Positions 251-47,000 are shown, counted from the stretch's first letter. The stretch: DNA of 64,000 nucleotides from Macrostomum lignano (GCA_002269645.1 NIVC01000276.1:124001-188000); one strand, 5' to 3'. The notes: generated by a model not told the origin, from the sequence alone. A program made the numbers and translations.

Positions 251-337
251 CTAAAGCGTCTCCTAAAAACTTGGCCACGTTTCAGCGTTGATTTGACTGG
301 TTGTAAAATTTTGTAAAGCCCAGGTGAAATTTTTTAC

Positions 338-1014: not shown

Positions 1015-1993
1015 GGCATGGCTTGGTGAATGGCTGGGTATGACGCCAGCAAAGCACAAAGGAGCTGATTCCTTCCACTAGCGCTGAATTAATTTTCCAA
1101 CTTTTTTGTTGTCCGTCGAATCAACAACTGAGCCACCAAAACAGCAAACTGCAGCAAATTATGTTTTATTATAAATATTCATGTTACTAAATTTAGCTTA
1201 CTCTATTTTTGCTCGATTGTATGAAAACATAGTTTTACCATAGATTTAAGATCGAGATTTACAAAATAAGGATTGATCAACCTCCGATTTTTTATCAAGA
1301 CAGCAATGCTCTATAGCAGATGACATATCATAAACATAATATGCATTCTTAGTCGAAATTTTAGTGTATAGGAAGAACTTGTTTTTAAATTTTTAAAGTA
1401 TACTGTATAAGCCAAAAATTTTTAGCTAGTCCTAACTACCACATCTCATCCACTTTCATTCGAGTCGAGTCTTGTCTATAACAAATATCGTTGATATAGC
1501 TAGGTGAGTAAAAGCCCTTATATATTTAATTTCAGAAGATAAACTGAAGAAATCATAGCTTCAATCTCTGAGTCGATTTCATTGCATTTATAAATACAAT
1601 TTAGAATATAGGATTTATTCTTTAGATTTTTAGAAAGTAAGATTATTCAGCATAATTAATGAAATAATCGTTGTAACTGATATGGTTTCAGTCAAAAGTT
1701 ATTTTTGCAATATTTAATTGGTATCCAAAACTTATATGGTCGTCAAATAATGGCTAAAATAAAATTTAATGTAACAAACTTTAACGGCATGGAGCGAGTA
1801 CGCCGTGACGCGGCGAAAACTAATATTAATACGGTTTTCAAATCAATGTTTTTTTCGAAGAAAAAAGTTGAAATTCTAGTCAATTGTACACCGAGACAAT
1901 TTTTTTACAAACATGGTGTGACTGTAAGCTGGACTGTATTTTTTAGAAAATAGTCTCCGTAGATGGTAATTATTTATTTATAACCAGTGTCAA

Positions 1994-26000: not shown

Positions 26001-29000
26001 CCTCAGCGCCACTCCCCGGCCGCCACCGCCTCGGCCTCCTCGGCCGGCTACGCGGCTCTGCCGTGCTTCATCGAGATGCTGCGAATCAGCCTTCAGCACC
26101 TGGTCGACGAGCGCGACTTGCCAACCGTGCTCGAGTGCCCGCCGTCGCGCGGCTGGGATCTCAATAACGAGACCTCCAAGCAGTTGATGGGCTGCTGCTA
26201 CTGATGCTGAGCGGAGTCTGGACGGAAAGCACAGCTGCGGAACGACTCCGCCGCTGTGGACTGCCAGTTCTGCCGCGAGTGCCGCCAGTGGCACCAGTAT
26301 GCCGCCTGCGTGCTGAAGTTCATCGCTCCGGCCAAGCCCAAGCGGCTGCCCGTGAAGGACCTGCCCGAGGTGACGCCACAGCAGCCGCCGACGTCGCAGG
26401 CGTCGGGTACGTCGGACGATCGACGCTCGTCGAAAACTTCGCAGTCGCAGGCGCCGGCCGAGACAGCTGTTGAAGCCTCAGTGACAGTGCTGACATCGGC
26501 GTCGGCGCCTGGCGGAGCTTCTGGTAGCGGCGGCGCCGCCGCATCGACGTCGGCAGCTTCGACTTCCGCCGGCAGCGGCCGGGGAGCCGGCAGCGGCGGG
26601 GCGGCCCCACCTAGCTGGGAGGCCTTCCCTATGGACGAGAACTGCCTGCCGGAGGAGGACGAAACCAAGGCCGACGATGAGCCATCGGGCTCGGCCGATG
26701 ACCAGCAGGAGCCCGCGTTTGCTGATGCTCATCTGGCTGTGCACCTGCGTCTGGTTCGGGCTCTGCTCAAGGTGAGCTGCCTGGCTGCAAATTTATATAT
26801 AGTCGTTGGGAATTGAGGTCAGCTATCGTCATAGATTGAGGTTAACTAAGGTCAGGGAATCGAGGTCAACCAAGGTCGTTAATCAACTTTAACTACGGTC
26901 ACGAATCGGGGTCCAAATTGGCCGTGCGAATTTTATAAAACAGAAAGTATCTGACACTGGTTTTTGAACTGCTAAATTCAGGAACTCGAGTCGCACACGG
27001 ACATGGAGGTGACGCTGAGTATTCTGTCCTCTCTCAGCTACCTCTGTCTTCACTGCCACGCGCTCTACAAAGCTCAAGAGGAGAACAAAGACTTCGTGCA
27101 GTTTGTATTGAAGTACCAGTTTATTCCCACGTGAGTATATCCGTAATTTTTATTGATTATTATTATGGACAAAGTGCAATTGGTTCCCGACTGAACCTGC
27201 CCTCCCCCGGGTGCCAACACAGGCTGTGGAAGCTGCTGAAGGCGGAGAACTCGGCGCTGGCTGGCGGTCTGGTGTCGCTGCTGCTTCACTGCCTGGCGCT
27301 GCACTCTGGCGCCGAGGTGTTCTGGTCCATCCTTGAGCGGGAGTTCACCAGCGACAGCTGGCGCACCCGCTTTGATGCGGTCGAGAAGGTGCCTGATGCT
27401 CTCTCGCTGGATATTGGGATTGGGTTGATATTTGACTGGTTGCTTGGTGCTTTTAGGGCAGGAAAATTCGTGATAATCTGAATTTTTATGCAAATTCACG
27501 ATTGCTTTTTTTCTCAATCTGATCTCTCCCTCATTCTCTGACCTGTGCCTCTCTGATCTGTGCCTCTCTGATCTGTGCCTCTCTGATCTGTGCCTCTCTG
27601 ATCTGTGCCTCTCTGATCTGTGCCTCTCTGATCTGTGCCTCTCTGATCTGTGCCTCTCTGATCTGTGCCTCTCTGATCTGTGCCTCTCTGATCTGTGCCT
27701 CTCTGATCTGTGCCTCTCTGATCTGTGCCTCTCTGATCTGTGCCTCTCTGATCTGTGCCTCTCTGATCTGTGCCTCTCTGATCTGTGCCTCTCTGATCTG
27801 TGCCTCTCTGATCTGTGCCTCTCTGATCATCTGTGCCTCTCTGATCTGTGCCTCTCTGATCTGTGCCTCTCTGATCATCTGTGCCTCTCTGATCTGTGCC
27901 TCTCTGATCTGTGCCTCTCTGATCTGTGCCTCTCTGATCTGTGCCTCTCTGATCATCTGTGCCTCTCTGATCTGTGCCTCTCTGATCTGTGCCTCTCTGA
28001 TCTGTGCCTCTCTGATCTGTGCCTCTCTGATCTGTGCCTCTCTGATCTGTGCCTCTCTGATCTGTGCCTCTCTGATCATCTGTGCCTCTCTGATCTGTGC
28101 CTCTCTGATCATCTGTGCCTCTCTGATCTGTGCCTCTCTGATCTGTGCCTCTTTGATCTGTGCCTCTCTGATCATCTGTGCCTCTCTGATCTGTGCCTCT
28201 CTGATCTGTGCCTCTCTGATCATCTGTGCCTCTCTGATCTGTGCCTCTCTGACCTGTGCCTCTCTGATCTGTGCCTCTCTGATCTGTGCCTCTCTGATCT
28301 GTGCCTCTCTGATCTGTGCCTCTCTGATTTCTTTTGCCTTGATCTTTAAGTGTAAATGCAGAAATGTTCAATATCCACATTTCTTAGACCAAGTCTTTAC
28401 TATCACCTACCCTACACGTATCCGTATAAACATAAATAATAGTTCAAACCTGTTCAATCGCTTATTGCACTCAAATCTCGCATCCCAGGTGACCGTGATC
28501 TGCCGGGAGATGTCGTCGGATTGCCCGAAGGCCTCCTACATAGTCGTGACGTCGCTGGCCCACGCGTTCAGCAATCTGATCGGCTCTCTTGATGNNNNNN
28601 NNNNNNNNNNNNNNNNNNNNNNNNNNNNNNNNNNNNNNNNNNNNNNNNNNNNNNNNNNNNNNNNNNNNNNNNNNNNNNNNNNNNNNNNNNNNNNNNNNNN
28701 NNNNNNNNNNNNNNNNNNNNNNNNNNNNNNNNNNNNNNNNNNNNNNNNNNNNNNNNNNNNNNNNNNNNNNNNNNNNNNNNNNNNNNNNNNNNNNNNNNNN
28801 NNNNNNNNNNNNNNNNNNNNNNNNNNNNNNNNNNNNNNNNNNNNNNNNNNNNNNNNNNNNNNNNNNNNNNNNNNNNNNNNNNNNNNNNNNNNNNNNNNNN
28901 NNNNNNNNNNNNNNNNNNNNNNNNNNNNNNNNNNNNNNNNNNNNNNNNNNNNNNNNNNNNNNNNNNNNNNNNNNNNNNNNNNNNNNNNNNNNNNNNNNNN

Positions 29001-32000
29001 NNNNNNNNNNNNNNNNNNNNNNNNNNNNNNNNNNNNNNNNNNNNNNNNNNNNNNNNNNNNNNNNNNNNNNNNNNNNNNNNNNNNNNNNNNNNNNNNNNNN
29101 NNNNNNNNNNNNNNNNNNNNNNNNNNNNNNNNNNNNNNNNNNNNNNNNNNNNNNNNNNNNNNNNNNNNNNNNNNNNNNNNNNNNNNNNNNNNNNNNNNNN
29201 NNNNNNNNNNNNNNNNNNNNNNNNNNNNNNNNNNNNNNNNNNNNNNNNNNNNNNNNNNNNNNNNNNNNNNNNNNNNNNNNNNNNNNNNNNNNNNNNNNNN
29301 NNNNNNNNNNNNNNNNNNNNNNNNNNNNNNNNNNNNNNNNNNNNNNNNNNNNNNNNNNNNNNNNNNNNNNNNNNNNNNNNNNNNNNNNNNNNNNNNNNNN
29401 NNNNNNNNNNNNNNNNNNNNNNNNNNNNNNNNNNNNNNNNNNNNNNNNNNNNNNNNNNNNNNNNNNNNNNNNNNNNNNNNNNNNNNNNNNNNNNNNNNNN
29501 NNNNNNNNNNNNNNNNNNNNNNNNNNNNNNNNNNNNNNNNNNNNNNNNNNNNNNNNNNNNNNNNNNNNNNNNNNNNNNNNNNNNNNNNNNNNNNTGGGGT
29601 ATCAGTAATTTCCTGGGGTATCAGTGCCTTCCTAGAGAATCAGTGCCTTCCTGGGTATCAGTAATTTCCTGGGGTATCAGTGCCTTCCTAGAGAATCAGT
29701 GCCTTCCTGGGTATCAGTAATTTCCTGGGGTATCAGTGCCCTTCTAGAGAATCAGTGCCTTCCTGTGAGGTGTCAGTGCCTTCTTAGAGTTTCCCTGAAG
29801 TGAGATATGTGTGTCCGTAAACGGCAGAATAACTACTTTAGCTATAGTTAAATCGAACGCAAAAATCCATTTTTAAACTCCGTACAAAAAGTTTTCTTCG
29901 CAAGCAAGGCAGGTCATTTTTATCCTCTTTCAGTACGTCACCAAGTGGCTCAATGAGGTGTACCGTCTGCACCTGGAGATTGTACTGTCGGTACTACTGC
30001 CTCATCCGCCAGATTATGCCAGAGTTGGAGGCTACTGGTGGGTTTGGGTCTGTAATTACTGTTTCCTATTGCTGTAAGAACCACTCCACTTCTATGCGCT
30101 CAATTCACCTCCATGCAGCCACCCCACCTCCATGCAGCCACCCCACCTCCATGCAGCCACCCCACCTCCATGCAGCCACCCCACCTCCATGCAGCCACCC
30201 CACCTCCATGCAGCCACCCACCTCCATGCAGCCACCCCACCTCCATGCAGCCACCCCACCTCCATGCAGCCACCCCACCTCTATGCAGCCACCCCACCTC
30301 CATGCAGCCACCCCACCTCCATGCAGCCACCCCACCTCCATGCAGCTCAGATGGAAGTAAAAGTCTGGCAGATTAAAGTATGCTGACTTAAGCCGTATCT
30401 GATCTTACCACAAGCACTTTTCGAGCCATTTTGAGCTTCTTTTGAGACGCAGCTGTATCTCCCGAGTCTTTTGGATTGTCGAGTGTCTCAAAAAGCTGCT
30501 CACGAGTCAAGTCTGTTACTATCAAGCCGTCACGCCACCTTTCAGGAACCTAAGCAGCAGCCGCACCGACATCATCCAGGAGGGCCTCGGCCGGCTGCTC
30601 AGCCTGGTTCAATACGATTGCATCATCACTTTCGATGTGTGGAACTACACAATGCCGTTCTGGCTCGAGGCCATTCGCACCGAAGTGCCGCCCGAAGAGC
30701 TGCCCCGCCTCAGCATGGTGATGCGCAAGCTGTACGACCTGCACAGCGGCCCGTTCCCCTGCATGGCCTCCAAGCTGTTCAACTTTGCGGCCGAGCGGTT
30801 CGATCAGACCACCGTGGCGGTGCAAGATCAGGTGCGAATCTTAGGCTGCTAGTGCTCTATTCCCCGTTTGCGATCCCAATCTCCATCGACATCCTGATCC
30901 CAAATCCCATCGGACATCCTGATCCCGAATCTCCATCGGACATCCTGATCCCAAATCCCATCGGACATCCTGATCCCGAATCCCATCGGACATCCTGATC
31001 CCGAATCCCATCGGACATCCTGATCCCAATCCATCGACATCCTGATCCGAATCCCATCGGACATCCTGATCCAAATCCATCGACATCCTGATCCCGAATC
31101 CCATCGGACATCCTGATCCCAAATCCTTCGGACATCCTGATCCCAAAACCCATCGGACATCCTGATCCCAAATCCCATCGGACATCCTGATCCCGAATCT
31201 CTATCGGACATCCTGATCCCGAATCTCTATCGGAATCCTGATCCGAATCTCTATCGGACATCCTGATCCGAATCCCTCGGACATCCTGATCCAAATCCCT
31301 TAGGACATCCTGATCCCGAATCTCCATCGACATCCTGATCCGAATCTCCATCGGACATCCTGACCGAATCTCCATCGGACATCCTGATCCCGAATCTCCA
31401 TCGGACATCCTGATCCCGAATCTCCATCGGACATCCTGATCCCGAATCTCCATCGGACATCCTGATCCCGAATCTCCATCGGACATCCTGATCCCAAATC
31501 CCATCGTACATCCTGATCCCAAATCCCAGCAAAGTCATAATTTCATTCTTCATCTCTGCCTCTGCTCTCAGGTGCTCTCCTGGCTGCGCATCCTGACGGA
31601 CCTTCGCGTCCCGATCCAAATCTTGGAGCTGTTGCCGATGTTCCGCAAGGGAGTCGAGTCTCTACTGAATCCTGGCGCCGCTGCCGCTGCCGCTGTTGCG
31701 GCCGCCGCCGAGCTGGACGAAGATCGCGACGTGAACACCCGGCCGGATGATGCGGCGGCCGGCGCGACCGGCGGCAGCGCCAGCAGCCAGACCTCAGCGC
31801 CACTCCCCGGCGCCGCCACCGCCTCGGCCTCCTCGGCCGGCTACCGGGCTCTGCGTGCTTCATCGAGATGCTGCGAATCAGCCTTCAGCACCTGGTCGAC
31901 GAGCGCGACTTGCCAACCGTGCTCGAGTGCCCGCCGTCGCGCGGCTGGGATCTCAATAACGAGACCTCCAAGCAGTTGATGGGGCTGCTGCTACTGATGC

Positions 32001-35000
32001 TGAGCGGAGTCTGGGACGGAAAGCACAGCTGCCGGAACGACTCCGCCGCTGTGGACTGCCAGTTCTGCCGCGAGTGCCGCCAGTGGCACCAGTATGCCGC
32101 CTGCGTGCTGAAGTTCATCGCTCCGGCCAAGCCCAAGCGGCTGCCCGTGAAGGACCTGCCCGAGGTGACGCCACAGCAGCCGCCGACGTCGCAGGCGTCG
32201 GGTACGTCGGACGATCGACGCTCGTCGAAAACTTCGCAGTCGCAGGCGCCGGCCGAGACAGCTGTTGAAGCCTCAGTGACAGTGCTGACATCGGCGTCGG
32301 CGCCTGGCGGAGCTTCTGGTAGCGGCGGCGCCGCCGCATCGACGTCGGCAGCTTCGACTTCCGCCGGCAGCGGCCGGGGAGCCGGCAGCGGCGGGGCGGC
32401 CCCCCTAGCTGGGAGGCCTTCCCTATGGACGAGAACTGCCTGCCGGAGGAGGACGAAACCAAGGCCGACGATGAGCCATCGGGCTCGGCCGATGACCAGC
32501 AGGAGCCCGCGTTTGCTGATGCTCATCTGGCTGTGCACCTGCGTCTGGTTCGGGCTCTGCTCAAGGTGAGCTGCCTGGCTGCAAATTTATATATAGTCGT
32601 TGGGAATTGAGGTCAGCTATCGTCATAGATTGAGGTTAACTAAGGTCAGGGAATCGAGGTCAACCAAGGTCGTTAATCAAGTTTAACTACGGTCACGAAT
32701 CGGGTTCCAAATTGGCCGTGCGAATTTTATAAAACAAAAAGTATCTGACACTGGTTTCTGAACTGCTAAATTCAGGAACTCGAGTCGCACACGGACATGG
32801 AGGTGACGCTGAGTATTCTGTCCTCTCTCAGCTACCTCTGTCTTCACTGCCACGCGCTCTACAAAGCTCAAGAGGAGAACAAAGACTTCGTGCAGTTTGT
32901 ATTGAAGTACCAGTTTATTCCCACGTGAGTATATCCGTAATTTTTATTGATTATTATTATGGACAAAGAGCAATTGGTTCCCGACTGAACCTGCCCTCCC
33001 CCGGGTGCCAACACAGGCTGTGGAAGCTGCTGAAGGCGGAGAACTCGGCGCTGGCTGGCGGTCTGGTGTCGCTGCTGCTGCACTGCCTGGCGCTGCACTC
33101 TGGCGCCGAGGTGTTCTGGTCCATCCTGGAGCGGGAGTTCACCAGCGACAGCTGGCGCACCCGCTTTGATGCGGTTGAGAAGGTGCCTGATGCTCTCTCG
33201 CTGGATATTGGGATGGGGTTGATGTTTGACTGGTTGCTTGGTGCTTTTAGGGCAGGAAAATTCGTGATAATTTTTATGCAAAATCACGATTGCTTTTTTT
33301 CTCAATCTGATCTCTCCCTCATTCTCTGACCTGTGCCTCTCTGATCTGTGCCTCTCTGATCATCTGTGCCTCTCTGATCTGTGCCTCTCTGATCTGTGCC
33401 TCTCTGATCATCTGTGCCTCTCTGACCTGTGCCTCTCTGATCTGTGCCTCTCTGATCTGTGCCTCTGATCTGTGCCTCTCTGATCTGTGCCTCTCTGATC
33501 ATCTGTGCCTCTCTGATCTGTGCCTCTCTGATCTGTGCCTCTCTGATCATCTGTGCCTCTCTGATCTGTGCCTCTCTGATCTGTGCCTCTGATCTGTGCC
33601 TCTCTGACCTGTGCCTCTCTGACCTGTGCCTCTCTGATCTGTGCCTCTCTGATCTGTGCCTCTGATCTGTGCCTCTCTGATCTGTGCCTCTCTGATCATC
33701 TGTGCCTCTCTGATCTGTGCCTCTCTGATCTGTGCCTCTGATCTGTGCCTCTCTGACCTGTGCCTCTCTGATCTGTGCCTCTCTGATCTGTGCCTCTGAT
33801 CTGTGCCTCTCTGATCTGTGCCTCTCTGATCTGTGCCTCTCTGATCTGTGCCTCTCTGATCTGTGCCTCTCTGACCTGTGCCTCTATGATCTGTACCTCT
33901 CTGATCTGAGCCTCTCTGATCTGTGCCTCTATGATCTGTGCCTCTATGATCTGTGCCTCTCTGATCTGTGCCTCTCTGATCTGTGCCTCTCTGATCTGTG
34001 CCTCTCTGATCTGTGCCTCTTTGATTTCTTTTGCCTTGATCTTCAAGTGTAAATGTAGAAATGTTCAATATTCACATTTCTTATACCAAGTCTTTACTAT
34101 CACCTACCCTACACGTATCCGTATAAACATAAATAATAGTTCAAACCTGTTCAATCGCTTATTGCACTCAAATCTCGCATCCCAGGTGACCGTGATCTGC
34201 CGGGAGATGTCATCGGATTGCCCGAAGGCCTCCTACATAGTCGTGACGTCGCTGGCCCACGCGTTCAGCAATCTGATCGGCTCTCTTGATGACATTAATA
34301 CAGCCGTGGCGCAGCGAGCGCAGCTTTACCTGGAGACCGTGAAGCAGAGCTCGCTCAGGTGTATGATCCAGTGTTTGGAGGCCCAGTTCGACTCCGTTAT
34401 TAACGATCGCACACTGATACTGCAGCGAATATACCAACTGAGCTGCGCTTTGAAGGACGCTCCGGTCTTGACTTGGGATTTTTTCATGGCGCGATTTGAC
34501 GCCCTGTCGCTGGAGGCCCAGCTCGACTTGGAGAGCCGGGGCGATATCACCTGCGCTACTGGTGAGGGCTGGAGGTGGAGGGTATCAGGGTAGGTGAAGG
34601 GAGGGTAGAGGTGAAGGGAGGGTAGAGGTGAAGGGAGGGTAGAGGTGAAGGGAGTGTAGAGGTGAAGGGAGTGTAGAGGTGAAGGGAGGGTAGAGGTGAA
34701 GGGAGTGTAGAGGTGAAGGGAGGGTAGAGGTGAAGGGAGTGTAGAGGTGAAGGGAGGGTAGAGGTGAAGGGAGGTAGAGGTGAAGGGAGGGTAGAGGTGA
34801 AGGGAGTATAGAGTGAGGAGAGTTGAGCTGTGCGGACAGAGAGCCTCCCCCGCCCGCAGACATATCAGGCAACAGCAACCGGGACTCGGAGGCGTTCATG
34901 CGCAAGTACAACCGGGCCAGATTCGCCGTGGCACGCACTGACAGCGTCCGTTCTGTGAGCTCCTCGGCATTCGTGAAGCCGCCCTACAGACGCGCCTGCT

Positions 35001-38000
35001 CAGTGCCGATGCACCTGCTCAGCCGGCCAGGCAAAGCAACCGCCGCAGGGCACAAAGGTGAGGAGAGCACTGGTTGCGGGGGTGGGGGCTCTGATAACCT
35101 GACGACTTATCTAGCATATTTGCGTTTCTGTTGCCGGTGAATGGACTGCTTCTGTTTATTTTTAATTATTTGTTTATTATTATTACTATTATGAGACATA
35201 CTTTCTAATGTTGCATCTGTTCATCCTACTACTATACGTGCCTGCGAATCAGTCCGTCTGTTCTGCACAAGTCTTTGTCCTGTCCTGTCCTTGGGAATTG
35301 CACGCGGGCTTCGAAGCTTTGGTTTTTTAAAAATCGTCTAGTTAGACTGCTGGACCTAGTTGAACCAAGGATTTCGTGACTGTTTTTGTTACTCTAAGTT
35401 CTCGAAAAATCCGCTTCAATAGTGAGTGGGCTGACTGGGAGAGCACACTTGGCTGAAGCAGCGAACCCGCTTGTTTTCAACATGTTGTACAACAAGTCTT
35501 GTTTTTAATTTTATTTGTAACTGTTATCCGTTTTCACAAAGAGGATTGAGTTTTTCGTTTTCAGTTTCTTCACAGTTGCAGCGAAACTCACTACAGTAGC
35601 CATTCTTCAATAAATTCATTGCCAGTTTAAGCAGGGAGTCCCAAGGACTGGAGCGGCAGGCCCACTTTGCTAAATTCTCCAACAGACACACGTCCACGCA
35701 GGGTGTACAGCGGCCCGGAATTCCTTATCTTCAGACAGCACACAACAAGGCCTTTCGCGTAATAGAAGCATAAGCTCCGCTCCCCCATTTCCACGGTCTA
35801 GAGTGTTGGTCTACGTCTCTGACCGTTCACGGATAGAAGTCTGATGCGATTGAATACAATAAAAATTGCTACACTATTATCGCAGAGGAAAATTTCGATC
35901 AGGAACCGCAGCAGCAGCATCAGCAGCAGGACCGGCAGGAGCACCTGCTGATGACGCTAGTCGATGAGGCTGCAGCCGCAGCAGCCGCAGCAGCGGTTGG
36001 CTGCGTTACTCAGCAACCACCAGCCGTGATGAGGCGCTGTTTCACGGCCAGCCACCTTAGACCCATTAGTAATTAAATGCTAAAAGTCCTCAATGGGATA
36101 TAAATTTGTCCGTAGAGAATTCAAGCGTTAGCCGCACAACGTGGTTGGCTGGCCAAGCTCCTATGTCTAAGTAATAAGGCGTGCACCTGTGTTGCCTCAC
36201 GGGACCCGCTGCCGCACACACACACACACCTGCTATTCGCTACCGTGCACTCCACTCCGCCATTTGCACACACGAGTTCGATCTTGACAGTTTTGCACGC
36301 GTGTGCTTTTTTAGCTACAGAGTCTTACGCAAGCGTGATTGTCTCGGTTCCACAGTCTGATCGTAGGTCTTTGTGCCTCTGTCCCGGGGTTTAAACTGTA
36401 AGCTTTCTCTACCTCGCTCTCTCTCAATTGCTGGCAAAATTTCTGTTGTATTTGCCGCACTGTGTGCCGATTTGCCCGTTGTTTCTCAAACAGCAGCTGG
36501 CAGCTCTCTTTGTTCTGAAACGATTGTCAGCTGCGGAGGGTTGGCTTGTACATACTAACAGTACACGGCATTGTTGTTTATCTAATATTACATGCGATAG
36601 TGAAGCATACAATAAACAGTTACACTACGTCATATGGCACAGTCCACAGGTAATTTTTATATCATAGTTTACATGTCCCGTGAGTCTCTTTGTGAATCGT
36701 ACTCGACACATCTGCTGCAAGCTTCAAGTCACGAAGAAGTGCAGCAGTAGAAAAAGTTCCTGGGGCGCTTTTGACAGTTGTACTGTCAAATTTATGCAGT
36801 TCTGTTTTTAAAAGTAATCGTAAACTTCAGTGTCTACAGGCAATTAATTGATTGATCTCACCTGCAAGTAGCAGCATATGACTGAAAATCTCACAATGAA
36901 ATGAATAGAAATTCCAAAATTGGAGCCGCAACCGACGGCCTAAGTTTGTTCAGCGCGTGGCTTGCATTTGAGATCATGCTCAGCCATTGGTATTCGGCCA
37001 CTTGTGGCACTTTCTTATTAATTCAACTGCGTGCTAGTTTTCATTAATTTAAAATCGCTATTTTTGCTTAATCAGTTGCACGACTCGCGTTCGATATATA
37101 TAAAGGATTATAATTGGAGACAAGCCTGCTCTATATGCCTCTTTGTTACACTCTGCTTCCCCTGCTCATGAATGCAGACTCAATTCAGACAAAGCAGCTG
37201 CTGCTGCCGCTGTGGCCCCACGTGTGTAAGTCCTCCGCCGCATTGCATGGCTTCGTATTCTCTTCTTTCTATTTTTTTTGGCTCGCATGGCCGCTCAGAC
37301 CGCCGTCCGCCGCCATCCCGCACAAACACCAATCCCGAACCCGAATTTCCAAAACCGCCACTGCGGGAAAGAGAAAGCGGCTGATCGGTTCTTTATTATT
37401 GACAGCCTCGCCTATACTCCGTGTGCAGATTTATTATCAATATTTTTATCAACTTTTTGGTTCCACTCGGTTTCATCCTTCGTCTAAAATAGTGCTCACG
37501 AATTCGAATAATGGCTCGGCTTATTTATTTCTCTGTTTGTCATTTTATGTTCTATATGCAAAAACAGCAGGGTTTCATTTTTGATTACTGGTAAATTGAA
37601 GCTGGTAGAATTTTGATATGGATATAAAAATTAGCATTCAACGAGTACCGTCATTGTCGCATGATTGTCGTCGAGATATTTTTTGAGTTTAGAAATTTTT
37701 GATAACGATCTCAAACTATGAATAATTTCAAAAAGCGAAAGCACACTGTTTCATTGTTTCGAGTCGCCTGGGACTAAGGCTAAATATGTACGGCTCTCTG
37801 GAGCTGGAGTCCATACGATATGATTATAGATTTGATCCCAACTCGATTTTCCCACACAATATGTTTGAAGTGCTCAGAATTTATACTGCTCTTGTATTTG
37901 CGTGATGTTTTAGAATCGAATTATTATTTTAAGTTTCCCTTGCTTGACAGCGTACTATTGTGTACTTCGCTATATATTTAGGCTATAGTCCGATCAGGAG

Positions 38001-41000
38001 TGTGCATAAAACATACAAACGATTTATAGATTTGATAGAAAGTCTGCAGACCTTTCGAACCTTTCGAAATGTACACTAAGGCAGAAAAAGAGCAGAAAGG
38101 CTAAGGCGTGAGGTTGGTGTATATACATGTAGGGGTAGGATCGGAGAGAGAAGTGACCCAGACTGCTGATAAGGAAACCTTAAAATGTACACTAGGGCAG
38201 AAGGGCAAGGCGTGAGGTTAGTGTACATATGGATAGGATTAAGAGAGAAGTGGCCCAGACTGCTGATAAGGAAACCTTAAAATGTACACTAGGGCAGAAG
38301 GGCAAGGCGTGAGGTTAGTGTACATATGGATAGGATTGAGAGAGAAGTGGCCCAGACTGCTGATAAGGAAACCTTAAAATGTACACTAGGGCAGAAGGGC
38401 AAGGCGTGAGGTTAGTGTACATATGGATAGGATTGAGAGAGAAGTGGCCCAGACTGCTGATAAGGAAACCTTAAAATGTACACTAGGGCAGAAGGGCAAG
38501 GCGTGAGGTTAGTGTACATATGGATAGGATTGAGAGAGAAGTGGCCCAGACTGCTGATAAGGAAACCTTAAAATGTACACTAGGGCAGAAGGGCAAGGCG
38601 TGAGGTTAGTGTACATATGGATAGAATTGAGAGAGAAGTGGCCCAGACTGCTGATAAGGAAACTTTAAAAATGTGCAGAAATAGGGCAGACAGAGCGGAA
38701 GGGCAAGGCAAGTGTACTGAGAAGGCTAGAATTGGAGAGAAATTGCCGCGCATGTATGAATAAATGTACATTATTAAATAATTTTCACTCTCGATGGGCC
38801 AGAAAGGCAAGGCGGAGGTGGGTTGTCCAAAACATCTTGAGGAATCCTTAGATAACTCTCGGACTCTCGTAGACAATGTCAAGGCGGTCTTCCCACAAGA
38901 GGCAGACAAGGCATACTAGTCAAAGTCTGGTTTACAATCTTATACACCTGAAATATTGCTTTGAAAATTTGGCAAAATAATTAATAAGACGAAGAGTATG
39001 CTACCGAGTAACCGTTTTATCCAGAGAGGCCACTTTTTTACCATCGACCTGACCAGCCCACATCCATCCAGTTAGTTGGCGGCGCCTCGGGAGAGTTTTA
39101 CAGTAGCTATCTTGCCCGATAAGCATTAAAAGCGCGCGTGTGCACCGCACCTCCCTCCTCTACTCCCCTCGCGCGCCTGTTTCACTCCTACCTACCCCTC
39201 CGTCCTTGAACTTAGCAGCTTTTTTTCGGGCTAATCTCTGTTTTTGTTTGAGAGCTCTCCAATTTTCTTTTTTACGAGTAGTTGTCTATACAAGAAAATT
39301 TCATTAATTAGGAATACCTTTGAATCCATAGACTTAGCTACTAGTTTAATTTAGACGAACGTGACCCGCACTTTAAAACTGATTGCGTCAACTTTGACTG
39401 CATTGCGCGCAAAAAATGCCATGTTGCATCTGCAATATTGCTGGAAATGTTGGTTTGACCAGCTGGGAAAGGCACAGCGGGTTGGTCGTTCCAAATCATT
39501 AAGCAGAGCCCTGGAGGCTAATTGAGGCAACGATTTCATAAATCTTCGATTTTACATCGGTAAATTAAATAAAGCCGAGCCTGTAATTTTTTTATTTTAC
39601 AGCTTTTTGTATGTAGCTCATTTTTGCATGATGATAGCTACTCGTACTCTCTTATCAGTTCAAGTGAATGTGAATTGATTTATTTATCGAATTACTATAT
39701 GCTCGTATTTGTAGGAAATTTTTCTTAAATGTTCTAGCTGGCTTCACAGAACATTGCTCGTATTTTTGGTTCCGCTTTAAAAAGACACCCGCTTCTCTCA
39801 CTTTTGTTTTTATTCCAAACGTCTCGTCGGACTCTCTAGCAGGTACGCCAGCTGGTCCTTTTTCTCCATAATTTATTACTATGATTATATTCAATATTCA
39901 GCTTTTCTTTACCAGACGCTTTTTAATTAACTTTTTTACTTGACAGAATATTTAATCTCAGCTTCCGTGTCGCTTCCTCTTATTGTCGGTGTACTTTTGT
40001 TGCTGCTTATTAATTATTCCGCTTGACCGGCTGTCCATCTCTATCTGTCTTTCTCCATCTTGTTCTATCCACCTGTATCTCAACTTAATTATGTTAGCAT
40101 AGCTCCCAGCCATTTGGAATTTACATGCAGTGTCAAAATTAGGCCTTCGATCTGATTTCAATTGTAGCAGCAGAGTGAAAGACTATCAAAATTCATAGCG
40201 CAATGCATTTGAATATTATTTGTCAGTTATTCCCCGAACTGTGCTTTAAACTGCAGACATAGAAATAGACCATTGTTTCTTTGCTATTATTAGTAATAGC
40301 AAAATGTTCGGAGCAGTCTTGCTAACTTTCCCTGTACAGCCTATTTAGCACAATATTTAGTATATTTAGATTCATACTTAGCTAACTATTATGGCATGTG
40401 GTCAGCGTTATTTCAACTTACTATGCCTATTATTATTATTATACTAATAATCTGCTTGTAAATGAAAAGAAATTTAACTGAAAAATGGCAAACAAGTTTT
40501 CCTAATTACTTTATTAATTCCATTGGTTCTAACGATAACTAGCTTCTTTTGACATGTGTTTATACTTGCGTCTGTAAACAGAGACAATATTCTGGCAGGG
40601 GTTAAATTTGAATTTGATTATTAATCTACACAAGCTGGCTTTTCCCAAGCCATGCGAAACTAATTGATCCAAATGAATGAAGACTCGGGCATTCCATATA
40701 ACATTAGTGTCCTGGTCGCTCGGCGTGCTGCCAAATCCATCTGAGCTCATCATGAACTCATCCGAGCTGCCGCCTCGCAGCAGGCTGAGCAGGCAAATGC
40801 CGCTCATGGCCTACAACCGGCTGCTGCTTGCCAGCCTGCAGCAGCAACACCCGGAGCAACCGCATCAGTCAAGCTCCTGCGATTTGCCCAGCGAAGTCGG
40901 AGGTTTCTGGAAGCCTGCCCCCCATCATTTGCATCTGCATCCCCCGCCTCCATCGATTTGTTTGTTTGTTTGTTTTTGGTTTGACTTTTGCTCCTTGATT

Positions 41001-44000
41001 TGGTTTCTGATATGCAGTGCTCAGCTAATCCACCGGTTGGCCGGAACGAATTCTCATTTACAAGAAATCCCCGATTATTTAAGCATTCGTACGAGTATTT
41101 GTTATTGTTTTTAATACTGAGTGACCCTCAAACCCTGAATACCAGAGTGAGAAAACCTCTATTAACACTTGGAGAGGCCTTGAATTTCAGTTTTTATCAG
41201 CATTATACACGAACTCTCGTGAGTCATCATGGAACCGAATGCGAAACCGCCCTCTTTCAGAGAGGCGCCCCCCTCCCGTTTGAAGTTATCAACCCCGTGC
41301 TGGCATCAGACTGCGTGTGCTACAGCCCGTTATTTTTCCACGTCGTTTGCAGGAACTTTATGAGTGTATTTTAGTGCGAACTCGCCCGTAAATTTGATTG
41401 GAAACCTAAGCGGGGATCTCGGAGCGGCTCGTCTCTCTTCCCGCCCCGCCTCCCCACCTCTCCTCCGGTCTCCCGGTCTTCCCAGGTCGCGCTGTGAGGC
41501 TCGCTCGAGCAGCTCAGCTCAGCTGCCTCGCCTTTTCCCTTCCCCTTCCATCCCATTCCGCCTCCTCTCCCAAGCCGCGCTATCTCAACCCTTCCCAAAT
41601 CCCCCATGTTGAGTAGGACTGCGGGGAGCGGGATTAGAATCGGGTTGTACTTTTATTATCCTCCCGGTGTGACACTTCCTTGATGCAGAATTTTTTTCGT
41701 AAGGAGGGCAAGGGAGAAACGCTTTTTTATTTTATCAGTTGGAGAAAAATTCTGCCCTATCCACGGTATGTCCCAACTTGACTACTCATGACAATCTGAT
41801 GGGACATATTATCTACTTTATATGCATAGTGCACTGAAATTCACTCATGCCACAGCAATCAAGATATTATGAAATATTATCGACAGGACTTATCAAATGT
41901 TTAATTAAGGTATTAATGACATTGCACAGTGTATAGCGCTAGCGTAAGGTAGTTTAGCTGTTGAAATTAAAACAAGAAACAATTATTTGTTAAACTGATT
42001 CGAACTGTGACTAACCGATTGAATTTCGCGCCTCGCGCCCGCCTGCAGACGTGCCAAAGGACAAGCAGTACTCCAGGCAGGCGTCGGCGCCTTTGTTCTC
42101 CGTTGGCCGGCGAAAATCAAAGAACGCCCTGGGCGCAATTAGCAGCTTCGTGCTGTCCGGTGAGTCCGCCCTGCTCAGCTCACCATGTCAGGTTTTGGGC
42201 TGCCCTGCGCTGTACGCGTGTGCTCAGTTATTGTGGCCGATCTGTGGAGCTGGCCATTGTTTGCTGGTCTCTGGTTGTTATTGGTCATTGATTCTCGTTC
42301 ATTGCTCATTGATTCTCGTTCACCGGTCATTGATTCTCGTTTATCGGTCATTGATTCTCGTTCACTGCTCATTGATTCTCGTTCATTGCTCATTGATTCT
42401 CGTTCATCGGTCATTGATTCTCGTTCACTGCTCATTGATTCTCGTTCATTGCTCATTGATTCTCGTTCATCGGTCATTGATTATCGTTCACTGCTCATTG
42501 ATTCTCGTTCATTGCTCATTGATTCTCGTTCACTGCTCATTGATTATCGTTCACTGCTCATTGATTCTCGTTCATTGCTCATTGATTCTCGTTCACTGCT
42601 CATTGATTCTCGTTCACTGCTCATTGATTCTCGTTCATTGCTCATTGATTCTCGTTCATCGGTCATTGATTCTCGTTCATTGGTCATTAATTCTCGTTCA
42701 TTGGTCATTGACTCTCGTTCATTGGTCATTGATTCTCGTTCACTGCTCATTGATTCTCGTTCATTGCTCATTGATTCTCGTTCATCGGTCATTGATTCTC
42801 GTTCATTGGTCATTAATTCTCGTTCATTGGTCATTGACTCTCGTTCATTGCTCATTGATTCTCGTTCATTGGTCATTGATTCTCGTTCATTGCTCATTGA
42901 TTCTCGTTCATTGGTCATTGATTCTCGTTCATTGCTCATTGATTCTCGTTCATTGCTCATTGATTCTCGTTCATCGGTCATTGATTCTCCTTCATTGCTC
43001 ATTGATTCTTATTTATTGGTTATCGAATCTTGTTTTTTAGTCATATGTAATTGCTTCTTGGTCATTGGTCATTGTTCATTCAATCTTTATTTTTTAAAGT
43101 AAATTCTTTGTCATAAGTTTTCAGTAATTAGTCATTGATCACTGCTTCTTGGTCATTGGTCCTCTGTCTGTATTCTTTAAGTGTATCGAGCAGTCAATCA
43201 CCGCATTCACGCATTGTGTTGATATTTGTCCATAACTGCCATCAGATTTGCGCAGCCATATGATGCAATCAACATTACGCTTTATATTCCCAATGTTTTT
43301 TTCGCGATAGTTCGGCGTTAAAATTCGCTGTCAGAGTTTTGGTGTAACTAACAAATGCCTGTTGTTAATTGCCAGTAATTAATGATTTAATATCTCATTT
43401 TCCCCCGGTCGAACCCAGAGCCTGGCAGGCCGCAAGGCGCCAACAAGCAGCAGGGTAAATGCAGGCGGCGGGCCGCGCTTCTCTTCTTTGTTTTTTTACA
43501 CCTGTTCTCCACTTTAGAGAGAAAATGCTCAGTGCATTTCGATTTGCCGCGCGCGGCTGAGAGAGGCGGTTAGCATTGGATAGAAATTGATTTAGCCAAT
43601 TATTGCTATTTAGCGCCGCAGATGCTGATGTTGCTACTGTCAGTAAGGCAAACTGGCAAAAGTTTGCTCTAAAAATGAGTTGCTATTTTTTAAACTTGTG
43701 TCATTAATTTTTAGTTTACATCACAGAATACACCAGAATGCTCAATCAGCTTCCAAATCGAAAGCCAAAATATAAAACCATAGACACTACTCCTGAGGTG
43801 AAGAAGCGATAAGTAGTACTGAAATTTGAGAAGTAGTCACCTTTTTGTACGTCCATTCGAGGGGGAATATTTTATGGACAGAAGGTCCCGATTGTATATT
43901 TGCAGCTGTAGCGACATGAAAATGTAGATATTAATTGTGAACATTAAAAGCAAACTAGAACAGTTTAAAAACAGCAGTATGAGCAGCAGTTTAGGCAATT

Positions 44001-47000
44001 GGGTACGTGATATAGCCGTATATGAAAATTGAGCCTTGAGTTTCTGCCTTAGCTGCAGCATGGTCGCAACTCTTCGACCGGTAGGCTTGGGTAAGGGCAC
44101 AGTAATCGGCGGAGCGTCCTTTCTCGGAGACATGTCTAAAGGTTCACCTCGGACAGTCGGAGATGGCAACAGTTGATAGTCGGCAACTAAGCTGAGTTAT
44201 TGTACACTAGGCATCCAATAGATAGGATAGATGGACAGAAAGACAAGCGAAAAACATCGTCTATGGCAAAATCGATCTTAATACACTAGGTTGATGAAGA
44301 AAGCCAGCACTACTCACGAATCACTTCACCTTAGAAGTAGCGTAGCTAGCAAATAGTTTTTGCCTCAACTTTTTTTCGCAGGGAGCTTGATTGAGCATTC
44401 TGGTGTATTCTGTGGTTTACATGTTTCTTTAGTTTTTTAGTGAGCTGTTGCTGAATTCCTGTGGTCGGTTTGAAAACTGCTGGTTAGGGTGGTTAGGCTT
44501 TGCGTACTTTAACTCGAAAGCAAGCTATAATTATTATTCTAGTGAGGTATGAAAACCGAGTCAGAAGTCGCAACTGCGCGCGCATTGAGTTTCTTTTTTA
44601 TTAATAAACATTATTTTGCTATAGCACCTGTCTGTATTAATTTATTGTATTAGGTGGAGGGAAACTTTCGAACATGTACTTTTGCCTTCTATTTCTTACT
44701 CTTTAATTCTCCTGTATCACAACTAGTGTCCCTCTAGCATATCACGAATCGAATGCTATCATTTTATTTCTAATCAATATTGGCTGCTGCAGGTACAATG
44801 ATTTAGCCAGAAAATTTCTCAAGCAAAAGCATCAGCTCATTGGCTAGTATTTATCACTGCCTCTTGAAATTATAATTTTCCTATTCAGCTGTAATATGTT
44901 CTGTCTCTGCACTATGCATTAATCCTGTCCACTACTTGGCTAACTGCAGTTTTTCTACACTGGTTTCTGAGAACGTTTCGCAAGAATTCTAATTATACCT
45001 CTGATCCGGGGAATTACGTAGCTCGGGATTCTCGGTCTCGGAAAATGCCCCCTAACGCGGGGGGGGGAATTCCCACTGGTGCAGATTTGAATTGTGTACA
45101 ATTTTCCGAATTGGAACGCAGGCGGCCAATTCCGCGAGTTCACTGATGAAGAGAGCAACTTCGCGGCGCAGCTGCAGCGGGCCCTGGACCTCGAGGGCGG
45201 CGACCGGGAAACCCTGCACCAGCTGGTGGCGCTGCTGCTGCACTTCATGGCCAACCTGGACCTCGCCACTCAGAGCGACGACAGGCAGAACACGAAGACT
45301 CAGAGCTTGGTGCTGCGGCACCTCAACACGCTGCTGGGGTACAACCAGGCTGACAAGACGTTTAGCGTGCCGCCCTACAAGCTTAGGTGCGTGAAAGCTT
45401 TGTGCACGGCCTAGATGACAATCGCCCCTGAACCGCCCTAGATGACAATCGCCCCTGAACCGCCCTAGATGACAATCGCCCCTGAACCGCCCTAGATGAC
45501 AATCGCCCCTGAACCACCCTAGATGACAATCGTCCCTGAACCACCCTAGATTGCAATCGCCCCTGAACCACCCTAGATGGCAATCGCCCCTGAACCACCC
45601 TAGATGGCAATCGCCCCTGAACCACCCTAGATTGCAATCGCCCCTGAACCACCCTAGATTGCAATCGCCCCTGAACCACCCTAGATGGCAATCGCCCCTG
45701 AACCACCCTAGATTGCAATCGCCCCTGAACCACCCTAGATTGCAATCGCCCCTGAACCGCCCTAAATGGCAATCGCCCCTGAACCACCCTAGATGGCAAT
45801 CGCCCCTGAACCACCCTAGATTGCAATCGCCCCTGAACCGCCCTAAATGGCAATCGCCCCTGAACCACCCTAGATGACAATCGCCCCTGAACCACCCTAG
45901 ATGAGAATCGCCCCTGAACCGCCCTAAATGAACAGTCATCCCTGAACCGCCCTAGATGACAATCGCCCCTGAACCACCCTAAATGAACAGTCATCCCTGA
46001 ACCGCCCTAGATGGCAATCGCCCCTGAACCACCCTAGATGACAATCGCCTCTGAACCACCCTAGATGGCAATCGCCTCTGAACCACCCTAAATGAACAGT
46101 CATCCCTGAACCGCCCTAGATGAAAATCATCACTTAAGCTCAAAAACTATTTTCTCGCATCCCAACTCAAGGAGCCTGACGGTATTCCACGCATTCATTG
46201 GCGGCATTTCGCCCGTGCTAGACTGCAACTTTGAGGTTGGCAACAATGTACTTCACGTGGCCCTGGCAGTGCTGCAGTACGCTCCGTCGCCTCAGCGATA
46301 TGCCAGCGACAACCAACCACCAGACTACAGCCTCTGCCTGCTGGAGCCCTACACTAGGAACCACTGGCTGAATGCCCTGCTCATCATTCTCTATAAGGTA
46401 GGCTTTGAGATTTGCTACAACTTTTAGACTGCGGCGAGGGCTGACTGGCAAACTGAGGGAAATTGCGGGCGGAGGTTGACCCTTTAAATAAAGGCAGAAT
46501 TGCTTTCACGCTTTGCCAGTTTGCCCGCAACTCGTACGATTATTTATGAATGAGTGGTGACTAGTATTGTTGTCTCAACTCACTCGCCCACCCCGCTCTG
46601 GCCGCCGCAGTACCAGTACAACTCGCCCAACTTCGCGTCCATCATGGAGGTGCTCGTGAAGATCGCAATCAACACGATAGACGCTCAGGTTCACGTGTGC
46701 AAGGAGAACGCTGAGGAGGCCTTCGAACCTCCGGCTTCGCATTCGCACAGGCCACGGGGTGAGTTTGCGCTACCACCGGGGGAGAAAGGTGTTCTGAGTT
46801 GCTTTTTTCAGTTTTTTTGTCCTTGCTGATCGATTTTTTCTTGCCGAAGGAATTCAAATTTTTGTAAAGCCACCATTTTGCAGTACCATTGAGGCACAGT
46901 TGCGGTTATGTGAGGCTTTTAGAGTAGCTCTTGTAGGGTAGGGGTTGTAGCCTAGTGGTTAGAGCGTCGGACTCTACCGAAAGTTCGGGGTTCGATTCTC

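What the first reader, a model, noticed from the sequence alone, without database searches (positions are those of the whole stretch)
35058..45121. Hidden cluster of five frame-preserving phase 1-1 cassette exons in the unc-79 variable loop
Seen: between exons 15 and 17, five GC-rich islands (35886-36068, 37178-37225, 40708-40902, 42049-42159, 43419-43454; 183, 48, 195, 111, 36 nt) each have AG/GT ends, a length divisible by 3, no stop, and phase 1-1 matching the flanking exons. Known: runs of symmetric exons are the signature of modular alternative splicing, and UNC79 (NALCN-FAM155-UNC79-UNC80 channelosome) has a variable loop here in vertebrates (recall). Inference: up to 32 combinatorial isoforms could tune the leak-channel scaffold. 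Most are invisible or misassigned in the ORF track. Caveat: I searched for phase-matched candidates, so some could be chance.
Basis: partly seen in the sequence, partly recalled or inferred. Interest (0 to 1): 0.72.

Follow-up and report, generated by a model that had tools for sequence, protein, structure and literature searches.

The report
Phase-1 exon string in UNC79 linker
One long intron of the UNC79 gene (a sodium-leak-channel subunit) holds one certain, anciently conserved small exon, two probable very short exons and two doubtful ones; this is ordinary gene structure, and the claim of 32 combinatorial isoforms is unproven.

Summary
The window carries an animal UNC79 gene on the + strand.

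Those bare criteria are worthless alone. 416 phase 1-1 pairs in this intron meet them, with no excess over other phases.

- **c4 (42049-42159):** a real exon. It has the best local splice sites. Its boundaries and phase match exons in two related metagenome contigs, and its RQxSAP motif recurs in four relatives. Its likely mammalian counterpart is a 22-residue insert, which I infer to be a 66-nt phase 1-1 exon. The mouse UNC79 used for cryo-EM has it; the two human UNC79 sequences in the PDB lack it.
- **c2 (37178-37225) and c5 (43419-43454):** probable short exons. They are the only + strand loci in the interval to pass a generic splice-plus-coding filter. About 0.06 phase 1-1 hits were expected.
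- **c1 and c3:** GC-rich, coding-like islands with poor splice sites and no detectable homologue. Unproven.

The related contigs carry three conserved phase 1-1 exons at the same place, so the architecture is old. Alternative use in this species could not be tested. A c2-to-c5 junction makes a TAG stop, so not all 32 combinations are open.

The parts
34860..35057 (+). Encodes DISGNSNRDSEAFMRKYNRARFAVARTDSVRSVSSSAFVKPPYRRACSVPMHLLSRPGKATAAGHK and ends in phase 1 (AAA G|gtgagg). Carries an RACSVP (RxxSxP) motif.
   Evidence: Homology to mouse and human UNC79. 67-69% identical to L001, L004 and L005. The end ...AAA G|gt is the same in L001 and L004.
35886..36068 (+). c1: a 183-nt GC-rich island rich in poly-Q and poly-A, open in phase 1-1. 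The acceptor is acceptable (tcgcag|AG). The donor is very weak (TTA|gtaatt). The frame runs into TAA at 36074-36076, inside an ATTAAA. Status: doubtful as an internal cassette exon.
   Evidence: Codon score 0.30 bits per codon and GC3 0.62, both below every known exon. No homologue in relatives.
37178..37225 (+). c2: a 48-nt candidate short exon encoding SIQTKQLLLPLWPHV. It has a pyrimidine tract plus tgcag acceptor and a GTAAGT donor. Status: probable exon.
   Evidence: GC3 0.80; 0.82 bits per codon; one of only two + strand loci passing the generic filter, phase (1,1). The resemblance to 27-nt exon B of the relatives (KPQTLLLP) is not significant (p 0.07).
40708..40902 (+). c3: a 195-nt GC-rich island with exon-like codon usage (GC3 0.77; 0.47 bits per codon). 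The acceptor is poor (cattag, no pyrimidine tract) and so is the donor (GAG|gtttct). Status: unproven.
   Evidence: No homologue in relatives. An exhaustive HMMER search gave only spurious hits to bacterial repeat proteins. No Pfam match.
42049..42159 (+). c4: a genuine, anciently conserved 111-nt phase 1-1 exon encoding VPKDKQYSRQASAPLFSVGRRKSKNALGAISSFVLS. Contains RQASAP (RxxSxP) and RRKS motifs.
   Evidence: Best acceptor (11.0) and best donor (6.6) of its island, both phase 1. tblastn to L001 2451-2558 at E 7e-5, in the right order and strand. Exon starts AC and ends G|gt exactly as in L001 and L004. Shuffle p <= 0.003 against L001, L004, L007 and P0002. Linked to the mouse 22-residue insert through the QSAP motif.
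43419..43454 (+). c5: a 36-nt candidate short exon encoding PGRPQGANKQQ. Good pyrimidine tract plus cccag acceptor; AGG|gtaaat donor. Status: probable exon.
   Evidence: acceptor in the top 3%, donor in the top 6% of all sites in the intron. It survives both filters in phase (1,1). Too short for a codon test (p 0.12). No counterpart in relatives.
45122..45386 (+). Starts in phase 1 (cag|GC GGC) and encodes GQFREFTDEESNFAAQLQRALDLEGGDRETLHQLV...
   Evidence: 74-80% identical to L001 and L004 over the first 40-47 residues. The start is the same in L004.

Best explanation
The 10-kb interval between two phase-1 boundaries of an animal UNC79 gene encodes a low-complexity linker rich in Ser, Arg, Gln and Pro. 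By analogy with the unmodelled parts of the mammalian protein, this linker is probably disordered.

The linker is built from a string of short symmetric (phase 1-1) exons, and this layout predates the split between this lineage and mammals.
- c4 is a real exon. It is the probable counterpart of the 66-nt phase 1-1 exon that I infer underlies the 22-residue difference between the mouse and human UNC79 sequences in the PDB.
- c2 and c5 are probably real short exons.
- c1 and c3 are GC-rich islands with coding-like composition but poor splice sites. They are more likely non-exonic, or only weakly or conditionally used.

Because every unit is phase 1-1, any of them can be skipped or included without a frameshift. 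This changes linker length and the number of basophilic-kinase / 14-3-3-type RxxSxP sites.

**Shown:** gene identity, exon anatomy, conservation of c4, and conservation of the phase-1 architecture.
**Inferred:** that c2 and c5 are spliced in, that any exon here is alternative in this species, and any functional effect.
For: - **Gene identity:** PDB UNC79 hits at E 2e-60; Pfam UNC-79.
- **c4:** best local splice sites, both phase 1. Boundaries and phase identical to exons in L001 and L004. Significant similarity to L001, L004, L007 and P0002.
- **Architecture:** L001 and L004 share only three alignable blocks between the flanking exons. All three are AG/GT-bounded, divisible by 3 and phase 1-1 (66/90, 27/27 and 108/105 nt). 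They have in-frame indels, and 8 of 12 substitutions in exon A fall at third codon positions.
- **Mammals:** 7w7g (mouse) has SKI-PVRLTRHEQSAPALGGTPEQTPG-QQSP where 7sx3 and 7wji (human) have SKI-R-QQSP. Only a phase-1 66-nt cassette gives Pro...Gly on inclusion and Arg on skipping.
- **c2 and c5:** the only + strand loci in the interval to pass a generic filter (pyrimidine tract, YAG, donor consensus, codon score), both (1,1). There were 3 loci of any phase in about 50 kb of controls, so about 0.06 (1,1) loci were expected. c5 also passes the matrix filter.
- **Islands overall:** the five islands are the five top-scoring loci of the intron and the top + strand codon-score islands. A control 10-kb intron has only two weak islands.
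Against: - No transcript data and no close relative could be obtained, so inclusion of c1, c2, c3 and c5 in mRNA is untested.
- c2, c5, c1 and c3 have no detectable counterpart in the distant relatives.
- The filter thresholds were set after the candidates had been seen. The splice matrices rest on only 13 donors and 11 acceptors.
- c5 is too short for a codon test (p 0.12).
- Control islands picked by codon score reach shuffle p-values similar to those of c1 and c2.
- The mouse/human difference comes from clones of two species. Alternative splicing within one species is inferred, not shown.
Confidence: 0.7

Rival explanations
1. One reading: all five islands are genuine cassette exons, used combinatorially to give up to 32 UNC79 isoforms.
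For: - All five are open in phase 1-1 with AG/GT ends.
- They are the five best-scoring loci in the intron.
- c3 has exon-like codon usage (GC3 0.77; shuffle p 0.001).
- Alternative exons often have weak splice sites (general knowledge).
- The position is probably alternatively spliced in mammals.
Against: - c1's donor TTA|GTAATT lacks both -1G and +5G.
- c3 has a pyrimidine at donor position +3 and no pyrimidine tract at its acceptor.
- c1's codon score is below every known exon.
- Neither has a homologue.
- 416 chance pairs meet the stated criteria.
- The c2-to-c5 junction gives TAG, so at most 30 of 32 combinations are open.
- There is no evidence of any skipping in this species.
Confidence: 0.07
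2. Only c4 is an exon: a constitutive 'exon 16'. The other four islands are chance phase matches in non-coding GC-rich sequence, such as regulatory elements or decayed repeats.
For: - Only c4 is conserved in any relative.
- A further GC-rich island at 41410-41600 is plainly non-coding CT-rich sequence, so GC islands here need not be exons.
- Control islands reach shuffle p-values like those of c1 and c2.
Against: - c2 and c5 combine a good pyrimidine tract, a YAG acceptor, an acceptable donor, GC3 of 0.80-0.82 and the correct phase. About 0.06 such phase 1-1 loci were expected and two were seen.
- Relatives have two extra conserved phase 1-1 exons (A and B) in the same interval, so more than one exon here is the norm.
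Confidence: 0.2
3. c1 is not a cassette but an alternative terminal exon. Splicing from exon 15 into 35886 would read 62 codons to TAA at 36074-36076, which lies inside ATTAAA (a common poly(A)-signal variant). The product would be a truncated UNC79.
For: - The acceptor is acceptable (score 3.8, top 6%) while no usable donor exists in or after the island.
- The stop codon and the ATTAAA coincide with the end of the island.
Against: - A stop soon after a GC island is expected in AT-rich intron sequence.
- ATTAAA is frequent by chance.
- The codon score of c1 is low.
- There is no conservation and no transcript evidence.
Confidence: 0.05

Closest known systems
The 22-residue insert that distinguishes mouse UNC79 (PDB 7w7g) from human UNC79 (PDB 7sx3, 7wji), inferred to be a 66-nt cassette exon
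   Same: - It lies at the same place in the protein, between the ...RxxS[LV]P...L(T/L)S(K/R) end of the upstream exon and the ...D(H/R)(Q/E)T(V/L)HQL helix.
- It is phase 1-1 by the Pro...Gly versus Arg junction logic, and its length is divisible by 3.
- It shares the (R)xxQSAPxxG motif with the c4 family.
   Different: - 66 nt against 111 nt.
- Direct similarity between c4 and the mouse insert is not significant alone (p 0.33). The link runs through L007 (p 0.003) and L001 (p 0.011).
- The mammalian evidence is a difference between clones of two species.
- Alternative use of c4 itself is untested.
Exons A, B and the c4-like exon of the UNC79 genes on metagenome contigs L001 (ENA ERZ23486763 scaffold_956) and L004 (JAAUXT010023365.1)
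   Same: A string of AG/GT-bounded, phase 1-1 exons divisible by 3, lying between the same two flanking exons. The c4-like exon has identical boundaries (starts AC, ends G|gt).
   Different: - Three exons there (66/90, 27 and 108/105 nt) against one certain plus two to four candidates here.
- Exon A (…LKPFFEHLIHK) has no counterpart in the window, and c1, c3 and c5 have none there.
- The introns there are 0.1-1.5 kb, against 10 kb in total here.
Neuronal short cassette exons (microexons) in disordered linkers of neuronal proteins
   Same: c2 (48 nt) and c5 (36 nt) are short, symmetric, and sit in a low-complexity linker of a neuronal channel scaffold. This comparison rests on general knowledge of the class, not on a test.
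   Different: They are longer than the strict 3-27 nt definition. Neural-specific inclusion and dependence on a regulator could not be tested.

Membership tests
UNC79 (NALCN channelosome subunit) | Sequence homology to UNC79 across several exons | tested here: met
   phmmer against the PDB: 7w7g_A at E 2e-60, 7wji_B and 7sx3_D at about 1e-58, over 374 of 377 query residues. Pfam PF14776 UNC-79 at E 5.9e-24 for the exon at 9819-10175.
Cassette (skipped) exon | AG/GT boundaries, length divisible by 3, frame open in the phase of the neighbouring exons | tested here: met
   True for all five. But 416 chance pairs in the same intron also meet this, so the feature does not discriminate.
Cassette (skipped) exon | Splice sites of usable strength | tested here: inconclusive
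   Met for c4 (11.0 / 6.6), c5 (6.6 / 4.2) and c2 (pyrimidine tract 11/12, GTAAGT). Not met for c1 (donor -5.9) or c3 (acceptor -8.2, donor -0.6, pyrimidine at +3).
Cassette (skipped) exon | Transcripts with and without the exon both exist | not testable with these tools
   No RNA data for this species. The protein collection holds no close relative. The only indirect evidence is the mouse versus human difference in the PDB.
Cassette (skipped) exon | Conservation of the exon, its splice sites and its length class in other species | tested here: inconclusive
   Met for c4. No counterpart for c1, c2, c3 or c5 in L001, L004, L005, L006 or L007. These relatives are only 62-80% identical even in the conserved exons, so absence is weak evidence.
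Mutually exclusive duplicated-exon cluster (Dscam-type) | Tandem exons of similar length and related sequence | tested here: not met
   Lengths are 183, 48, 195, 111 and 36 nt. No pair among c1-c5 is significantly similar (all shuffle p >= 0.07).
Recursive splice sites (ratchet points) in long introns | Pyrimidine tract followed by a juxtaposed AG|GTRAGT | tested here: not met
   The pattern YYYYNCAGGTRAGT with up to 1 mismatch has 0 matches in the window.
14-3-3 mode-I-type / basophilic kinase site (RxxSxP) | Sequence motif R-x-x-S-x-P | tested here: met
   RACSVP in exon 15 and RQASAP in c4. Equivalents are RAASVP and RQQSAP in L001 and L004, RTISAP and RQQSAP in L007, RAASAP and RQTSAP in P0002, and RALSLP and (R)HEQSAP in mouse.
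14-3-3 mode-I-type / basophilic kinase site (RxxSxP) | The serine is phosphorylated and binds 14-3-3 | not testable with these tools
   The only paper in the held library that mentions both UNC79 and 14-3-3 is unrelated.

The most novel reading that the evidence does not exclude
The UNC79 linker is an ancient alternative-splicing hotspot, shared by mammals and this invertebrate lineage. Phase 1-1 exons add or remove a second conserved RxxSxP site (in c4 and in the mammalian 66-nt cassette) next to a constitutive one at the end of the upstream exon. This would switch the linker between one and two phospho-dependent docking sites, for example for a 14-3-3 dimer, and so tune assembly, trafficking or activity of the NALCN channel complex. 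c2 and c5 would adjust the spacing between the sites.
Probability: 0.12. Interest if true: 0.55.

Novelty: new member of a known kind. Interest (0 to 1): 0.3.

Why it matters
- **Annotation.** ORF-based tracks miss or misassign a real, deeply conserved 111-nt UNC79 exon and probably two short ones. A correct gene model needs them.
- **Biology.** UNC79 is needed for NALCN sodium-leak currents, yet about 40% of the protein is unmodelled in cryo-EM and its linkers have no assigned function. This linker is built from frame-neutral exons in distant animals. Its conserved core is an RxxSxP motif that differs between the mammalian clones used for structures. That gives a concrete, testable handle on regulation of the channel complex.
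- **Limits.** Cassette exons in disordered linkers of neuronal genes are commonplace, and nothing here shows combinatorial use.

Tried and rejected
1. **Close relatives or transcript-derived proteins.** Two word-index protein searches found only one exon-17 fragment (P0001) and three distant homologues (P0002-P0004), with no close relative. Poly-Q and poly-A in the first query probably swamped its candidate list.
2. The representative search does not accept sequences that are not contiguous in the window.
3. **First metagenome scan** with a single protein found nothing. The second, with an alignment, gave L004-L007.
4. **Exhaustive HMMER search with the c3 peptide.** The two hits (P0005, P0006) are bacterial surface proteins with Rib-type repeats. 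A short GV(V/L)PNP(A/S)E match was summed over 8 repeats, so I rejected them as spurious.
5. **Homology of c2 to exon B and of c1 to exon A of the relatives.** Suggestive by eye (QT..LLLP; F..HL), but shuffle p is 0.07-0.09, so I rejected both as evidence.
6. **Nested gene, transposon or known RNA in the islands.** No Pfam hit for ten ORFs on both strands. No credible Rfam hit: the best, isrG, scored 22 bits against a cut-off of 100.
7. **Recursive splice sites:** none.
8. **Duplicated or mutually exclusive exon cluster:** no similarity among c1-c5.
9. **Alternative boundaries for c1 and c3.** The better acceptors (35976, 40781) are in phase 0 or 2, and no good donor exists, so no frame-consistent rescue was found.
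10. **Literature.** No paper in the held library describes UNC79 splicing in this loop or links UNC79 to 14-3-3.


Full report
**What the window is**

The + strand carries an animal UNC79 gene. A query spliced from five homology-supported exons matches mouse and human UNC79 in the PDB at E 2e-60 to 1e-58 over 374 of 377 residues. The exon at 9819-10175 matches Pfam PF14776 (UNC-79) at E 5.9e-24.

Exons are GC-rich: 0.63 overall and GC3 0.82 over 5.1 kb of homology-supported coding sequence. Introns are about 0.43 GC and full of minisatellites.

The stretch 23.8-28.6 kb is duplicated at 29.85-34.3 kb, at 93-99% identity, around a 1000-N gap.

**The observation**

Every mechanical statement is correct. 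The five segments have the stated coordinates and lengths, AG before and GT after, length divisible by 3, no stop at offset 2, and GC of 0.58-0.69.

The upstream exon (34860-35057) ends AAA G|gtgagg and the downstream exon (45122-45386) starts cag|GC GGC. Both boundaries are phase 1.

**Is it more than chance?**

The stated criteria alone are not. The intron contains 584 AG and 562 GT. It holds 4000 open AG..GT pairs of 30-300 nt. Of these, 416 are phase 1-1, against 393-508 in each other phase class.

I therefore built three measures:
- a codon log-likelihood, trained on 17 homology-supported exons against the intron background;
- splice matrices from 13 donors and 11 acceptors of this gene;
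- a rule-based filter that does not depend on that small training set.

Ranking all pairs by acceptor + donor + codon score, the five best non-overlapping loci are exactly the five islands. At four of them the best pair is not the 1-1 variant. The islands are also the top + strand codon-score islands of the intron. A 10-kb control intron (13.7-24 kb) has only two weak non-repeat islands. So the islands are real outliers. Whether each is an exon has to be judged one by one.

**c4 (42049-42159) is a real exon**

- Its acceptor (cgcctgcag|AC, score 11.0) and donor (CCG|gtgagt, 6.6) are the best of its island, and both are phase 1.
- A relative's scaffold (L001, reached through P0001) has exon 15 at 678-833, a c4-like exon at 2451-2558 (tblastn E 7e-5) and exon 17 from 2950. 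Order and strand are the same.
- In L001 and in a second relative, L004 (found by the second metagenome scan), the c4-like exon begins AC after AG and ends G|gt, as here. It is 108 and 105 nt long.
- The peptide is significantly similar to the equivalents in L001, L004, L007 and the unspliced ORF P0002 (shuffle p <= 0.003). The shared core is R-Q-x-S-A-P.

**The phase-1 architecture is conserved**

Between exon 15 and exon 17, L001 and L004 align by blastn only at three blocks:
- exon A: 66 and 90 nt, encoding KG...LKPF(F/L)EHLIH(K/R);
- exon B: 27 nt, encoding KPQTL(L/Q)LP;
- the c4-like exon.

All three are AG/GT-bounded, divisible by 3 and phase 1-1. Their indels are in frame. In exon A, 8 of 12 substitutions fall at third codon positions. 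A run of symmetric phase-1 exons is therefore the normal state of this part of UNC79.

**Mammals**

Mouse UNC79 in 7w7g (the paper states that mouse cDNA was used) reads ...LTSKI-PVRLTRHEQSAPALGGTPEQTPG-QQSPEND... The two human UNC79 sequences in the PDB (7sx3/7sx4 and 7wji) read ...LTSKI-R-QQSPEND..., and the flanks are otherwise identical.

Twenty-three residues replace one. Pro...Gly on inclusion and Arg on skipping are explained only by a 66-nt exon in phase 1-1 (C|CN ... G|GN against C|GN). That step is my inference from the genetic code.

The insert contains QSAPxxG and is linked to the c4 family through L007 (p 0.003) and L001 (p 0.011). It is not linked directly to the window's c4 (p 0.33).

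It sits exactly here, and it probably concerns the counterpart of c4. Alternative splicing within one species remains an inference.

**c2 and c5 are probable short exons**

- c2 has a pyrimidine tract (ctctgcttcccctgctc), a tgcag acceptor, a GTAAGT donor, GC3 of 0.80 and 0.82 bits per codon.
- c5 has ttttcccccggtcgaacccag|, AGG|gtaaat and GC3 of 0.82. Its sites rank in the top 3% (acceptor) and top 6% (donor) of the intron.
- Under stringent matrix thresholds, only c4 and c5 survive on the + strand, both (1,1). The control intron gives 0 on both strands.
- Under the generic filter, only c2 and c5 survive, both (1,1). There were 3 loci of any phase in about 50 kb of controls. That predicts about 0.6 loci per 10 kb and about 0.06 in class (1,1). 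Two observed gives a Poisson p of about 0.002.

Caveats: the thresholds were chosen after I had seen the candidates. c5 is too short for a codon test. Neither exon has a counterpart in the distant relatives.

**c1 and c3 are unproven**

- c1's only phase-compatible donor is TTA|GTAATT (score -5.9, with no -1G and no +5G). Its codon score (0.30 bits per codon) and GC3 (0.62) are below all 17 known exons.
- c3 has exon-like codon usage (0.47 bits per codon, GC3 0.77, shuffle p 0.001). But its acceptor is a TAG without a pyrimidine tract (-8.2) and its donor is GAG|GTTTCT.
- The better acceptors inside both islands are in the wrong phase, and no good donor exists.
- Neither has a homologue. tblastn of all intron ORF pieces against five related loci finds only c4.
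- An exhaustive HMMER search with c3 found only bacterial Rib-repeat proteins through a short repeated motif.
- There is no Pfam or credible Rfam match.
- c1's frame ends in a TAA inside ATTAAA right after the island, which allows an alternative-terminal-exon reading at low probability.

**The '32 isoforms' claim**

Nothing shows skipping of any exon in this species. c2 ends in T and c5 begins with AG, so a direct c2-to-c5 junction is a TAG stop. At most 30 of the 32 combinations are open. The five are unrelated to each other, so this is not a duplicated or mutually exclusive exon cluster. There are no recursive splice sites.

**How it probably works**

The exons encode a Ser/Arg/Gln/Pro/Ala-rich linker between helical repeat blocks. 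In the mouse structure only 1528 of 2654 UNC79 residues could be modelled, and the authors regard the rest as disordered. Whether this particular loop is among the unmodelled parts I could not check.

Exon 15 ends with PYRRACSVP. c4 carries SRQASAP and RRKS. The two RxxSxP motifs recur in L001, L004, L007, P0002 and mouse.

From general knowledge, RxxSxP is the loose mode-I 14-3-3 consensus and a basophilic-kinase site. Inclusion or skipping of a c4-type exon would therefore change the number of such sites, and the short exons would change their spacing. This is a hypothesis. I found no paper that connects UNC79 with 14-3-3.

**Verdict**

| Candidate | My estimate that it is an exon |
|---|---|
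| c4 | about 0.97 |
| c5 | about 0.65 |
| c2 | about 0.6 |
| c3 | about 0.25 |
| c1 | about 0.15-0.2 as an internal exon |

These probabilities are my judgement from the evidence above, not computed values.

This is a useful correction to a gene model, and a neat example of an old frame-neutral exon string. It is an ordinary kind of feature: a new member of a known kind, with interest about 0.3.

Noticed in passing
window 23800-28594 and 29849-34291, gap 28595-29594: Two copies, 93-99% identical, of a block of about 4.5 kb carrying several UNC79 exons flank a 1000-N gap. This is most likely an uncollapsed haplotype or assembly duplication. Copy 1 has a frameshift near 26192 that copy 2 lacks. 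Exon counts for this gene are inflated by it.
   Followed up: partly
window 41410-41600: A sixth GC-rich island in the same intron is a CT-rich low-complexity stretch (ctcttcccgccccgcctccccacctctcctcc...). It scores as 'coding' only on the minus strand, where one (1,0) AG..GT locus at 41458-41618 passes the splice filters. It has no Pfam match. Its function is unknown; it could be a regulatory element or an antisense exon.
   Followed up: partly
window 57440-58400: A decayed mariner/Tc1-type transposase sits in a UNC79 intron, with Pfam Transposase_1 at E 1.2e-12 and an HTH_32 domain, split over frames.
   Followed up: partly
window 10173-10181: The open frame of the exon ending near 10175 has no GT donor in range. 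The sequence ATGAAG|GCAAGC suggests a GC-AG intron.
   Followed up: no
window 37225 / 43419: c2 ends in T and c5 starts with AG, so a direct c2-to-c5 splice would create an in-frame TAG. If both are real, c3 or c4 must be included between them, or the product is a premature-stop (likely nonsense-mediated decay) isoform.
   Followed up: yes
window 36069-36077: Read past its weak donor, c1's frame ends at TAA 36074-36076, within ATTAAA (36072-36077). This is a possible intronic polyadenylation site or terminal exon.
   Followed up: partly
window 35000-35016 and 42076-42120; L001 about 800-830 and about 2470-2500: Two RxxSxP motifs (RACSVP at the end of exon 15, RQASAP in c4) plus RRKS are conserved in all relatives found, and in mouse (RALSLP, HEQSAP). 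They are candidate phospho or 14-3-3 sites in the UNC79 linker.
   Followed up: partly
window 22685-22726: A short island (DRLQDTLESIKSEV; the filtered locus is 22686-22723, 38 nt) in the 13.7-24 kb intron passes the generic splice and coding filter. It may be an unannotated small UNC79 exon rather than a false positive.
   Followed up: no
window 38136-38670 and 42280-43009 (and most other introns): Minisatellites (97 bp x 5.5; 21 bp x 35) stay open in several frames. They produce long spurious ORFs that extend real exons in an ORF track; for example, ORF 42051-43040 starts within c4, two bases after its first nucleotide.
   Followed up: yes
window 334-1059, minus strand: A GC-rich ORF of 241 codons with a high codon score lies on the minus strand upstream of UNC79. 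It has no Pfam match and is probably part of a neighbouring gene.
   Followed up: partly
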